A stretch of 64,000 bases of DNA from Octopus bimaculoides. Lineage: Eukaryota. The DNA is taken from positions 24,392,957-24,456,956 of the forward strand of contig NC_069001.1 of assembly GCF_001194135.2 (NCBI RefSeq), given 5' to 3'. The position numbers were made by a program, and so were the translations under genes. Positions 36,196-36,471 of the stretch are shown piece after piece (positions within the stretch are counted from its first letter, which is position 1; each line of letters opens with the position of its first letter). The notes beneath the pieces were generated by a model, which was not told the origin of the DNA, did not search any database, and was given only the letters and a program-made list of their open reading frames with translations.

Positions 36196-36471
36196 ACAGG
36201 CTTCTCTATCCAGCAGGCAAGCTACTTCAGGCTGATGACGAGCAAAGACTCAGAAACATGTCCCTGAATGCTGACTAGGCTGGGTGGAGGAGCTTGTCTC
36301 CCCCTCGCAAACTTAAGGACACAGTAATTGTGTCAAGGCCGACAGGAAGCGGTCCAGCTTCCTAGGGCTAAACGGCAGTAGTGTGTTCCCTTATTGGGAT
36401 TGTCACATTAAGTTGACAATATAGTACAACTTTATCGCTCCACTACTGCTTAAATCTCTCTGAGAGATTTA
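36196..36471 (+). mobile_element. GC-rich structured element carrying the hammerhead (retrozyme or Penelope pLTR-like)
   Basis: 19-bp outer helix 36196-36214/36279-36297 and further hairpins to 36471 (see findings). Confidence 0.6.
36226..36268 (+). ncRNA. Minimal type I hammerhead ribozyme
   Basis: uucagg-CUGAUGA-c-gag(caaaga)cuc-a-GAAA-caug-UC-ccugaa. Helix I is 6 perfect bp; helix III is the palindrome ACAUGU; GUC cleavage after 36262. Confidence 0.9.

What the first reader, a model, noticed from the sequence alone, without database searches (positions are those of the whole stretch)
36196..36471. Hammerhead inside a ~280-nt, extensively paired RNA: retrozyme candidate
Seen: the hammerhead (36226-36268) is closed, beyond an internal loop, by 19 consecutive pairs (36196-36214 with 36279-36297; 4 G.U pairs that work only on the plus strand). 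Further hairpins follow: gacaca/ugugu c (36318-36334) and aggaagc/gcuuccu (36344-36363). A 9-bp gcaguagug/cacuacugc stem (36375-36383 with 36441-36449) encloses auuguca/ugacaau. A final uaaaucucuc/gagagauuua hairpin lies at 36451-36471. The island is GC-rich in AT-rich flanks and has no ORF. Known: retrozyme RNAs are a few hundred nt long, non-coding, highly structured and hammerhead-processed into circles. Inference: a single monomer or remnant of such an element.
Basis: partly seen in the sequence, partly recalled or inferred. Interest (0 to 1): 0.9.

Follow-up and report, generated by a model that had tools for sequence, protein, structure and literature searches.

The report
Lone hammerhead retroelement copy in octopus
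A ~285-base, tightly folded, non-coding island in octopus DNA carries a real hammerhead self-cleaving RNA motif and is most likely a stranded single copy of a known kind of ribozyme-bearing mobile element, so it is a tidy but fairly ordinary find.

Summary
The plus strand folds far better than shuffles (z -5.6, against -3.8 for the minus strand). The island has 47-52% GC in flanks of 18-33% and no ORF.

The hammerhead at 36226-36268 has the canonical metazoan type I layout: helix I of 6 bp, then the core, a 4-position helix II with a CAAAGA loop, and a 1-2 bp palindromic helix III. A covariance model built without it finds it as the only new hit in the window (29.9 bits, E about 2e-5).

It has two weaknesses. 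The base of helix II is a C.A mismatch, and no Rfam hammerhead family matches it even at E<=10.

It is not shown to be a retrozyme in the strict sense. There is one copy in 64 kb, no tandem partner and no significant target-site duplication. No RT or GIY-YIG ORF lies within about 3 kb. No relative turned up in any collection I could reach.

The host is an octopod. A second, minimal-type hammerhead sits at 12425-12471.

Best reading: a solitary, probably immobile monomer of a Penelope-dependent hammerhead element. That makes it a new member of a known kind.

The parts
36190..36472 (+). Whole island: a non-coding, GC-richer, heavily paired unit of about 283 nt. The boundaries are approximate and are set by the composition step and the outermost pairs.
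   Evidence: GC profile. MFE fold with z = -5.56. No ORF. Single copy in the window.
36196..36214 (+). 5' arm of the 19-bp stem that extends helix I beyond an internal loop.
   Evidence: Read directly. Present in the MFE and centroid folds. The 4 G.U pairs exist only on the plus strand.
36279..36297 (+). 3' arm of the 19-bp stem.
36215..36225 (+). 5' side of the internal loop (loop 1 region). It ends in UAC directly before helix I, as in the Rfam HH9 consensus and the metagenome hammerhead L048.
   Evidence: Compared by eye with the HH9 consensus printed and with the L048 sequence.
36226..36268 (+). Type I hammerhead motif. Helix I is 36226-31 with 36263-68. The core CUGAUGA is 36232-38. Helix II with its loop is 36239-52, with a C36239.A36252 mismatch. 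GAAA is 36253-56. Helix III is the palindrome ACAUGU at 36256-61.
   Evidence: Descriptor hit. Chance expectation 0.01-0.023 per window. Independent model R1: 29.9 bits, E about 2e-5.
36262..36263 (+). Predicted self-cleavage site, between C36262 (position 17) and C36263 (position 1.1).
   Evidence: Inferred from the hammerhead numbering. Not tested experimentally.
36318..36334 (+). 6-bp hairpin GACACA/UGUGUC.
36338..36369 (+). Hairpin with an outer GGCC/GGCU stem and the inner 7-bp stem AGGAAGC/GCUUCCU (36344-36363).
36375..36449 (+). Long hairpin closed by the perfect 9-10 bp stem GCAGUAGUG/CACUACUGC. It encloses smaller stems, including AUUGUCA/UGACAAU.
   Evidence: (I17).
36451..36471 (+). 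Terminal perfect hairpin UAAAUCUCUC-U-GAGAGAUUUA.
   Evidence: (I14).
36469..36489 (.). AT-rich perfect palindrome TTAGAAATAT-T-ATATTTCTAA at the 3' boundary. It overlaps the last hairpin and leads into (TATAA)n-like simple sequence. It may be target sequence or a tail.
   Evidence: (I11). Whether it belongs to the element is not resolved.

Best explanation
The island is one solitary, monomeric genomic copy of a hammerhead-bearing, non-autonomous retroelement. It is of the animal 'non-LTR retrozyme' type, the type that depends on Penelope-like elements, and it sits in an octopod genome.

How active members of this kind work is taken from the literature; none of it is shown for this copy. Head-to-tail copies are transcribed. 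Two type I hammerheads with very short palindromic helices III pair with each other to form an active dimer. Each cuts after position 17, and the unit-length RNA is ligated into a highly paired circle. A Penelope-like reverse transcriptase/endonuclease then copies that RNA back into AT-rich DNA.

What is shown for this copy is the canonical hammerhead layout and an intact unit-length fold that is specific to the plus strand.

The rest is inferred. This copy has only one hammerhead, a helix III that cannot close on its own, and a C.A mismatch at the base of helix II that may be a CpG-to-CpA decay product. It therefore most likely cleaves poorly and cannot release or circularise a unit. On that reading it is an immobile offspring copy or remnant, not an active source element.
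For: - Hammerhead core and helices at 36226-36268.
- Such motifs are about 40-100 times rarer in shuffles than observed: 0.01-0.023 expected per window against 2 found.
- A covariance model built only from other hammerheads (Rfam HH9 consensus, metagenome L048, the window's 12.4-kb motif) finds the candidate as the only further hit in 128 kb of searched strand: 29.9 bits, E about 2e-5.
- The layout equals the published 'canonical' metazoan type I hammerhead: helix I 6 bp, helix II 4 bp, helix III 1-2 bp with a small palindromic loop, acting as dimers (PMC4209133). It also has the internally looped extension of helix I (PMC6155905). In the coral genome studied in PMC7229834, canonical motifs lie in retrozyme repeats, while the remaining motifs resemble the minimal variants of Penelope-like elements and Terminons.
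- UAC before helix I and the loop CAAAGA are shared with the HH9 consensus (loop CAAAAA) and with L048.
- GAAAC-palindrome-GUC is also seen in the cloned coral and mussel retrozymes.
- The unit is about 283 nt, GC is 0.47, there is no ORF and the fold has z = -5.6. These match the published ranges of 150-450 bp, GC below 50% and 'highly self-paired'.
- The plus-strand fold is better than the minus-strand fold, and all four wobble pairs favour the plus strand.
- No RT or GIY-YIG domain in ORFs across 33.0-39.3 kb.
- Dispersed monomer derivatives are described as common (bioRxiv 10.64898/2026.07.22.740005).
- A second hammerhead, of the minimal Penelope-like type, lies in the same window. This fits the reported co-occurrence of Penelope-like elements and retrozymes.
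- The host is octopod.
Against: - No second copy, tandem or dispersed, was found in the window, in 81 kb of Octopus vulgaris, in the JGI/ENA metagenome scan, or in the six-frame search of the 5.8-billion protein set. Multicopy status, the core of any mobile-element claim, is therefore unproven.
- Flanking direct repeats do not exceed chance.
- No Rfam hammerhead family matches, even at E<=10 on 111 nt.
- The 10.1-11.1 pair is a C.A mismatch.
- All stems are nearly perfect. That fits a young insertion, but it fits selection on a functional RNA equally well.
- My descriptor was relaxed after seeing the candidate. Model R1 rests on 3 sequences with N-padded loops and a short calibration.
Confidence: 0.58

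Rival explanations
1. The island is a severely 5'-truncated copy, or a solo pseudo-LTR, of an autonomous Penelope-like element (Neptune or Poseidon type). Only the hammerhead-bearing terminal region was reverse-transcribed into an AT-rich target. It would then be a fragment of an autonomous element, not a member of a separate ORF-less family.
For: - Cervera & de la Pena 2014 state that most genomic hammerhead motifs occur singly and are 'probably related to truncated PLEs'.
- Retrozymes and pLTRs are sequence relatives.
- The island abuts AT-rich simple sequence, and (TA)n is a preferred target of the Naiad clade of Penelope-like elements.
- Another hammerhead, of the minimal type, lies at 12425-12471, also directly followed by AT-rich simple sequence.
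Against: - The motif is of the canonical type: 6-bp helix I with an internal loop, 4-position helix II and a 6-nt loop. In the coral genome studied in PMC7229834, that type lies in retrozyme repeats. Penelope-like elements carry 'minimal' hammerheads with a short helix I and a long helix II (PMC4209133, PMC7229834).
- No RT or GIY-YIG remnant within about 3 kb on either side.
- The 5' edge of the island coincides with the base of the long stem, not with a cut through a structure. A random 5' truncation would not be expected to do that.
Confidence: 0.2
2. The island is a single-copy hammerhead-containing RNA retained by the host, as the intronic HH9 and HH10 ribozymes are in amniotes. It would be transcribed within a host transcript and would cut it in cis or serve as a structured regulatory RNA.
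For: - It is single-copy in everything searched.
- All stems are essentially perfect and favour the plus strand.
- The architecture parallels the HH9 consensus: distal stem, UAC, 6-bp helix I, and a 4-bp helix II with a CAAANA loop.
Against: - The searches could not reach the host genome, so 'single copy' is not established.
- Rfam HH9 and HH10 models do not match.
- The C.A mismatch and the unclosable helix III argue against efficient cleavage as a monomer.
- No exon or gene context was identified near the island.
- Conservation was not testable.
Confidence: 0.1
3. There is no hammerhead function at all. The structure is either a chance or decayed inverted-repeat structure, or a box C/D-like (k-turn) RNA whose UGAUGA and CUGA boxes mimic a hammerhead core.
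For: - No Rfam hammerhead hit. The only faint Rfam matches over 36227-36276 are C/D-box snoRNA models: SNORD44, sR41 and sR47, at 8-10 bits and E 2-10.
- CUGAUGA contains box C, and CUGA occurs at 36264-67 and 36272-75.
- Four wobble pairs all favouring one strand has a probability of only about 1 in 16 if the changes are transitions in a DNA palindrome.
Against: - The snoRNA matches lie far below their gathering scores (40-54 bits). The box spacing, about 30 nt, leaves no room for a guide region.
- The full hammerhead descriptor is expected 0.01-0.023 times per window.
- The independent model gives E about 2e-5 at exactly the predicted limits.
- The helix lengths and loops match the canonical type.
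Confidence: 0.07

Closest known systems
Metazoan non-LTR retrozymes (Cervera & de la Pena 2020, PMC7229834): coral, mussel and axolotl repeats of about 170-400 nt with type I hammerheads, expressed as circRNAs
   Same: - Canonical type I hammerhead with a 6-bp helix I, an internal loop, a 4-position helix II and a very short palindromic helix III.
- Unit length about 283 nt.
- GC below 50%.
- Non-coding.
- Highly self-paired.
- Found in a mollusc.
   Different: - One unit only, with no tandem partner, so there is no second cleavage site.
- Family copy number is unknown.
- C.A mismatch at the base of helix II.
- No sequence similarity to the published units that I could see.
- No expression data.
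Pseudo-LTR hammerheads of Penelope-like elements (Cervera & de la Pena 2014, PMC4209133; Craig et al. 2021, PMC8557442)
   Same: - A type I hammerhead that depends on dimerisation.
- Often found as a single motif in truncated copies.
- Inserted next to AT-rich or microsatellite sequence.
- Penelope-like elements are reported in Octopus spp. (Naiad remnants).
   Different: - No RT or GIY-YIG ORF and no second pLTR nearby.
- The motif is canonical, not the 'minimal' variant with a 4-5 bp helix I and a 7-8 bp helix II.
- The window's other motif, at 12425-12471, is the one that looks minimal.
Amniote intronic hammerheads HH9/HH10 (Rfam RF02275, RF02277)
   Same: Same arrangement: distal stem, then an internal loop ending in UAC, a 6-bp helix I, the core, and a 4-bp helix II with a CAAANA loop (HH9 consensus). 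A solitary genomic occurrence.
   Different: - No Rfam match at any threshold tried.
- Helix III is much shorter.
- Different phylum.
- Conservation across species is untested.
Newt satellite 2 and Schistosoma Sm-alpha hammerhead repeats
   Same: A type I hammerhead in a short non-coding repeat unit. Weak helix III and dimer-dependent cleavage, as described for the newt and axolotl motifs (PMC7229834, PMC6155905).
   Different: - Those are massively repeated: tandem satellite in newts, SINE-like in Schistosoma.
- ARAGORN found no tRNA-like sequence anywhere in the window, the island included.
- Only one copy is seen.

Membership tests
Hammerhead ribozyme, type I | Conserved core CUGANGA ... 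GAAA ... UH followed by the cleavage site, in the type I order with helix I open | tested here: met
   CUGAUGA at 36232-38, GAAA at 36253-56, U36261 and C36262. Model R1 aligns the full length.
Hammerhead ribozyme, type I | Three helices around the core, including the 10.1-11.1 pair at the base of helix II | tested here: inconclusive
   Helix I has 6 perfect pairs. Helix II has 3 bp plus a C36239.A36252 mismatch at 10.1-11.1. Helix III has only A-U and C-G around 2 nt, so it can close only in a dimer. Weak helices II and III do occur in natural amphibian motifs (PMC7229834).
Hammerhead ribozyme, type I | Match to a curated Rfam hammerhead model (Hammerhead_1, _3, _II, HH9, HH10) | tested here: not met
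   No hit at gathering score. None at E<=10 on 901 nt or on 111 nt.
Hammerhead ribozyme, type I | Loop 1 / loop 2 elements for the tertiary contact | tested here: inconclusive
   An internal loop sits 6 bp from the core. UAC precedes helix I and loop 2 is CAAAGA, resembling the HH9 consensus and L048. This is a comparison by eye with no 3D or kinetic test.
Hammerhead ribozyme, type I | Site-specific self-cleavage | not testable with these tools
   Needs in vitro transcription of monomer and dimer constructs.
Metazoan non-LTR retrozyme | Tandem head-to-tail units (dimers to multimers), so that two hammerheads flank a unit | tested here: not met
   Self-BLAST, TRF and model R1 find one unit and one hammerhead here. 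The only other hammerhead is 24 kb away and unrelated in sequence.
Metazoan non-LTR retrozyme | Unit of 150-450 nt, non-coding, GC below 50%, highly self-paired | tested here: met
   About 283 nt, GC 0.47, no ORF, z = -5.56.
Metazoan non-LTR retrozyme | Multicopy family in the host genome | not testable with these tools
   The host genome is not searchable here. No relative in 64 kb + 81 kb of octopod DNA, in the metagenome contigs, or in the protein-set proxy. These negatives only argue against copy numbers in the tens of thousands.
Metazoan non-LTR retrozyme | Target-site duplication longer than 4 bp, when present | tested here: inconclusive
   TACAAAA(G)TATAT-like repeats flank the island but do not exceed chance in AT-rich flanks: 237 of 500 and 875 of 2000 shuffles reach the same score, and so do 7 of 36 natural low-GC flank pairs.
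Metazoan non-LTR retrozyme | Expression as unit-length linear and circular RNA | not testable with these tools
   No RNA data available.
Penelope-like element pseudo-LTR | Adjacent ORF with an RT and a GIY-YIG endonuclease, and a second direct repeat | tested here: not met
   Pfam scan of all stop-free ORFs of 40 aa or more with adequate sequence complexity, across 33.0-39.3 kb, gave no RVT or GIY-YIG hit at E<=1. There is no second copy in the window. Very decayed remnants could escape this test.
Box C/D snoRNA | Box C (RUGAUGA) and box D (CUGA) joined by a terminal stem, with a guide region, scoring above the family threshold | tested here: not met
   Only 8-10 bits against gathering scores of 40-54. 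The boxes are about 30 nt apart.

The most novel reading that the evidence does not exclude
The island is a single-copy, structurally intact hammerhead RNA that an octopod lineage has kept from a retrozyme or Penelope-like ancestor. It would be an invertebrate counterpart of the amniote HH9/HH10 ribozymes, acting in cis on a host transcript or as a structured non-coding RNA. The near-perfect stems would then reflect purifying selection, not a recent insertion.
Probability: 0.1. Interest if true: 0.65.

Novelty: new member of a known kind. Interest (0 to 1): 0.32.

Why it matters
If genome-wide searches confirm a family, this would add cephalopods to the animals that carry canonical type I hammerhead retroelements. 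My literature searches found no paper describing hammerheads or retrozymes in Octopus. The only hit on the subject was the Penelope-like element survey, which mentions Naiad remnants there. It would also provide a compact, well-folded unit for testing dimer-dependent cleavage and circle formation in a mollusc with unusual RNA biology. As a lone copy it changes no concept: hammerhead-bearing repeats and their stranded monomers are already known to be widespread in invertebrates.

Tried and rejected
1. Rfam scans. The whole window at gathering score gave nothing. Scans at E<=10 over 901 nt and over 111 nt gave no hammerhead family, only microRNA-like matches to simple repeats and faint snoRNA matches.

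2. Six-frame translation of the island used as a proxy DNA search of the 5.8-billion protein set. 8000 word candidates were collected and none scored E<=1.

3. Exact-product look-ups of three ORFs next to the island, meant to fetch the same locus from other assemblies. None was on record.

4. Metagenome scan with CTGATGANNNNCAAAGANNNNGAAAC. It gave 102 hits, almost all chance matches inside bacterial coding sequence. One was a real type I hammerhead (L048). None resembled the island outside the pattern.

5. Search for a Penelope ORF. A pseudo-protein joined from the stop-free ORFs gave no RT or GIY-YIG hit. A motif scan found only one isolated YVDD.

6. Target-site duplication tests, ungapped and gapped, were not significant.

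7. CpG observed/expected is 0.44 in the island against 0.37 in the window. This says nothing about the age of the insertion.

8. MAFFT could not align the short hammerheads correctly. I equalised lengths by padding the helix III loops with N. The resulting model is therefore crude.

9. A LINE-like ORF search for the host lineage returned only two anonymous ENA proteins. The SINE-derived ORF search succeeded instead.

10. Sampling 81 kb of Octopus vulgaris found no relative of the island.

11. tRNA-derived SINE origin: ARAGORN finds nothing in the window.

12. Pfam on ten other window ORFs gave no hits.

Full report

Yes. Read directly, 36196-36214 (ACAGGCUUCUCUAUCCAGC) pairs at all 19 positions with 36279-36297 (GCUGGGUGGAGGAGCUUGU). 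Four of the pairs are G.U, and on the minus strand these would be C.A mismatches.

- GACACA/UGUGUC at 36318-36334.
- AGGAAGC/GCUUCCU at 36344-36363.
- The perfect 9-bp stem 36375-36383 / 36441-36449 (I17).
- The perfect hairpin with 10-nt arms at 36451-36471 (I14).

RNAfold reproduces all of them in one minimum-energy structure of -109.3 kcal/mol for 36190-36475. That is z = -5.56 against 200 dinucleotide shuffles, none of which folds as well. The minus strand reaches only z = -3.77.

Each half is significant on its own. The hammerhead domain gives z = -4.33 on the plus strand against -2.13 on the minus strand. The 3' half gives z = -4.66.

GC is 0.47 over the island and 0.52-0.53 in its core. 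It is 0.33-0.34 in 500-nt flanks and 0.18-0.31 immediately outside. No ORF of 24 aa or more lies within the island.

**2. Is the hammerhead real?**

The sequence reads as follows:
- UUCAGG (36226-31), the 5' strand of helix I.
- CUGAUGA (36232-38).
- CGAG, loop CAAAGA, CUCA: helix II.
- GAAA (36253-56).
- C-AU-G and U36261, completing helix III with A36256.
- C36262, followed by the cleavage site.
- CCUGAA (36263-68), the 3' strand of helix I.

This is the type I order. Helix I has six perfect pairs. After an internal loop it continues into the 19-bp stem.

There are two weaknesses. Positions 10.1 and 11.1 (C36239 and A36252) do not pair. Helix III (ACAUGU) is a palindrome that cannot close within a single molecule.

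Rfam gives no support. There was no hit at gathering score in the whole window. No hammerhead family appeared at E<=10 in 901 nt or in 111 nt.

I therefore tested the motif in two other ways.

First, a descriptor of my own. It required CUGANGA, a helix II of at least 3 bp with one mismatch allowed at its base, GAAA, A...U-H, and a helix I of at least 5 bp. It finds two sites in the window, both on the plus strand. Over 300 dinucleotide shuffles it expects 0.023 per window, or 0.01 with a 6-bp helix I. The descriptor was relaxed after I had seen the candidate. The second site is an independent observation.

Second, a covariance model (R1) built from three hammerheads that do not include the candidate. 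These were the Rfam HH9 consensus printed, a metagenome hammerhead (L048) and the window's second motif. Searching both strands of the window returned the training motif and, as the only other hit, exactly 36226-36268 on the plus strand, with 29.9 bits and E about 2e-5. The model is small and its calibration is short, so the E-value is rough. The coordinates and the uniqueness of the hit are not.

**3. What type of hammerhead is it?**

Cervera and de la Pena (PMC4209133) define the canonical metazoan type I motif. Helix I has 6 bp, helix II has 4 bp, and the two interact through their loops. Helix III has 1-2 bp capped by a small palindromic loop, so the motif works as a dimer.

The candidate has this layout. 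It also has UAC directly before helix I and a 6-nt loop 2, CAAAGA. Both resemble the HH9 consensus (UUAC and CAAAAA) and L048 (UAC and CAAAGA).

The cloned coral and mussel retrozymes show the same GAAAC-palindrome-GUC arrangement.

In the coral genome studied in the 2020 paper (PMC7229834), the canonical motifs lie in retrozyme repeats. The remaining motifs there resemble the 'minimal' variants of Penelope-like elements and Terminons, which have a short helix I and a long helix II.

Mismatches at the base of helix II occur in natural motifs; the axolotl HHR_Amex2 has a U.U there. The A at 11.1 follows a C. It could therefore be a CpG-to-CpA decay product of an original C-G pair. That is an inference.

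**4. Surroundings and host.**

The window is draft eukaryotic DNA with 16 runs of N, many microsatellites and several short interspersed repeats.

A SINE-derived ORF from the window matches 'Hypothetical predicted protein [Octopus vulgaris]' at up to 93% identity. The host is therefore an octopod.

The island is single-copy in the window and is not part of any tandem array. A Pfam scan of the stop-free ORFs of 40 aa or more with adequate sequence complexity, between 33.0 and 39.3 kb, found no reverse transcriptase or GIY-YIG domain at E<=1. The island is therefore not attached to a recognisable Penelope ORF.

The flanking AT-rich direct repeats (TACAAAA-TATAT and TACAAAAGTATAT) are no better than chance.

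The 5' edge of the island coincides with the base of the long stem. That looks like a complete unit and not like a random 5' truncation.

**5. Relatives elsewhere.**

None were found.
- A six-frame translation of the island against the 5.8-billion protein set gave nothing at E<=1.
- A metagenome scan for the core with this loop gave 102 matches. One was a real hammerhead (L048). None resembled the island outside the pattern.
- Exact-product look-ups of neighbouring ORFs failed.
- 81 kb of O. vulgaris genome fetched through the SINE proteins contains no relative.

These negatives argue only against copy numbers in the tens of thousands. Covariation could not be tested.

**6. Explanation.**

The best-supported reading is a solitary monomer of a hammerhead-bearing, non-autonomous retroelement of the animal non-LTR retrozyme type (confidence about 0.58). 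Such elements are now thought to derive from, and depend on, Penelope-like elements. Dispersed monomers are described as common, non-mobile offspring.

The mechanism for active members is taken from the literature:
- Tandem copies are transcribed.
- Two hammerheads dimerise through their palindromic helices III.
- Each cuts after position 17.
- The unit-length RNA is ligated into a circle.
- A Penelope-like enzyme reverse-transcribes it into AT-rich DNA.

For this copy the fold and the motif are shown. Activity is not. It has one hammerhead, an unclosable helix III and a mismatched helix II base. On its own it should cleave poorly and cannot release a unit.

The rivals are:
- A 5'-truncated Penelope-like element or solo pLTR (0.2). 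This is disfavoured by the canonical motif type, the absence of ORF remnants and the intact 5' stem.
- A domesticated single-copy ribozyme RNA like HH9/HH10 (0.1). The perfect stems fit it equally well, but it is untestable here.
- No hammerhead function at all: chance, or a box C/D-like RNA (0.07). The statistics above and the very weak snoRNA scores argue against it.

**7. Novelty.**

Hammerhead repeats, retrozymes and their stranded monomers are well known in invertebrates, molluscs included. My literature searches found no description of them in octopus.

This is a new member of a known kind, of modest interest. Its interpretation is reasonable but unproven at the decisive point, and its interest score was too high.

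Noticed in passing
window 12425-12471 (+): A second hammerhead motif. Helix I is GAGGC/GCCUU, followed by CUGAUGA. Helix II is a perfect 5 bp (AUGCC/GGCAU) with loop AAUA, followed by GAAA. Helix III is the palindrome AGUACGUACU, and C17 is 12465. It has a weak Rfam HH9 match (17 bits, E 0.059 on 141 nt). It is followed directly by AT-rich simple sequence and an assembly gap, and preceded by a 39-nt hairpin (12384-12422). 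It looks like the 'minimal' Penelope-type hammerhead at the 3' end of a truncated element. It shares no sequence with the island.
   Followed up: partly
L105 3636-3837 and 5282-5485 (Octopus vulgaris OX597836.1, inside a locus with a RabGAP-TBC gene): A dispersed repeat of about 200 nt. Two copies are 94% alike and lie 1646 nt apart; more diverged copies lie at about 18.5 and 19.3 kb on the other strand. It carries a weak hammerhead-like motif, CUGAUGA-AGCUUAAAAAAGGCA-GAAA (R1 scores 19-20 bits, E 0.02-0.04). Its helices are poor, so it may be a decayed hammerhead or a chance match.
   Followed up: partly
window, many sites, e.g. 5057-5254, 8216-8446, 16035-16388, 21114-21371, 39570-39702, 57000-57190: Many copies of a short interspersed repeat. 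One frame of it translates as '...SVYQIHSQGFGWPKAIVEDTCPRCHAVGLNPEPCG'. This frame matches annotated 'hypothetical predicted proteins' of Octopus vulgaris at up to 93% identity, which suggests that repeat-derived ORFs have been annotated as genes there. This match gave the host lineage.
   Followed up: partly
window 11408-11798 and 48300-48690; more diverged copies near 60353-60527, 23404-23581, 61543-61680 and 21937-22100: Another interspersed repeat family of about 390 nt. The best pair is 90% identical. It is unrelated to either hammerhead.
   Followed up: no
window 1-996 (+): ORF fragments like the C-terminal part of a LINE protein, with no Pfam hit. The closest relatives are two anonymous ENA proteins (39% and 31% identity). 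One lies on a 1.95-Mb eukaryotic contig (L103) among ORFs with RVT_1 hits. A fragment at 3870-4148 (+) looked mariner-like to me from memory, but it has no Pfam hit.
   Followed up: partly
window 36711-36787: Rfam mir-297 and mir-466 matches at 22-31 bits, against gathering scores of 85-90, on both strands. They fall in (TA/CA)-rich simple sequence and are low-complexity artefacts, not microRNA genes.
   Followed up: yes
window 27168-27516; 46839-47019 and 47726-47912; 14109-14277: Tandem repeats with longer units. One has a 117-nt unit in 3 copies (86% matches). One has a 72-nt unit on both sides of a 706-nt assembly gap (99-100% matches), so it is probably a single array collapsed by the gap. 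One has a 29-nt unit in 5.8 copies.
   Followed up: no
window, 16 runs of N (e.g. 5932-6630, 9140-9823, 27957-28779, 47020-47725): Assembly gaps account for the apparent very-low-GC kilobase bins in the composition profile. They also produce long spurious 'X' ORFs in the ORF list.
   Followed up: yes
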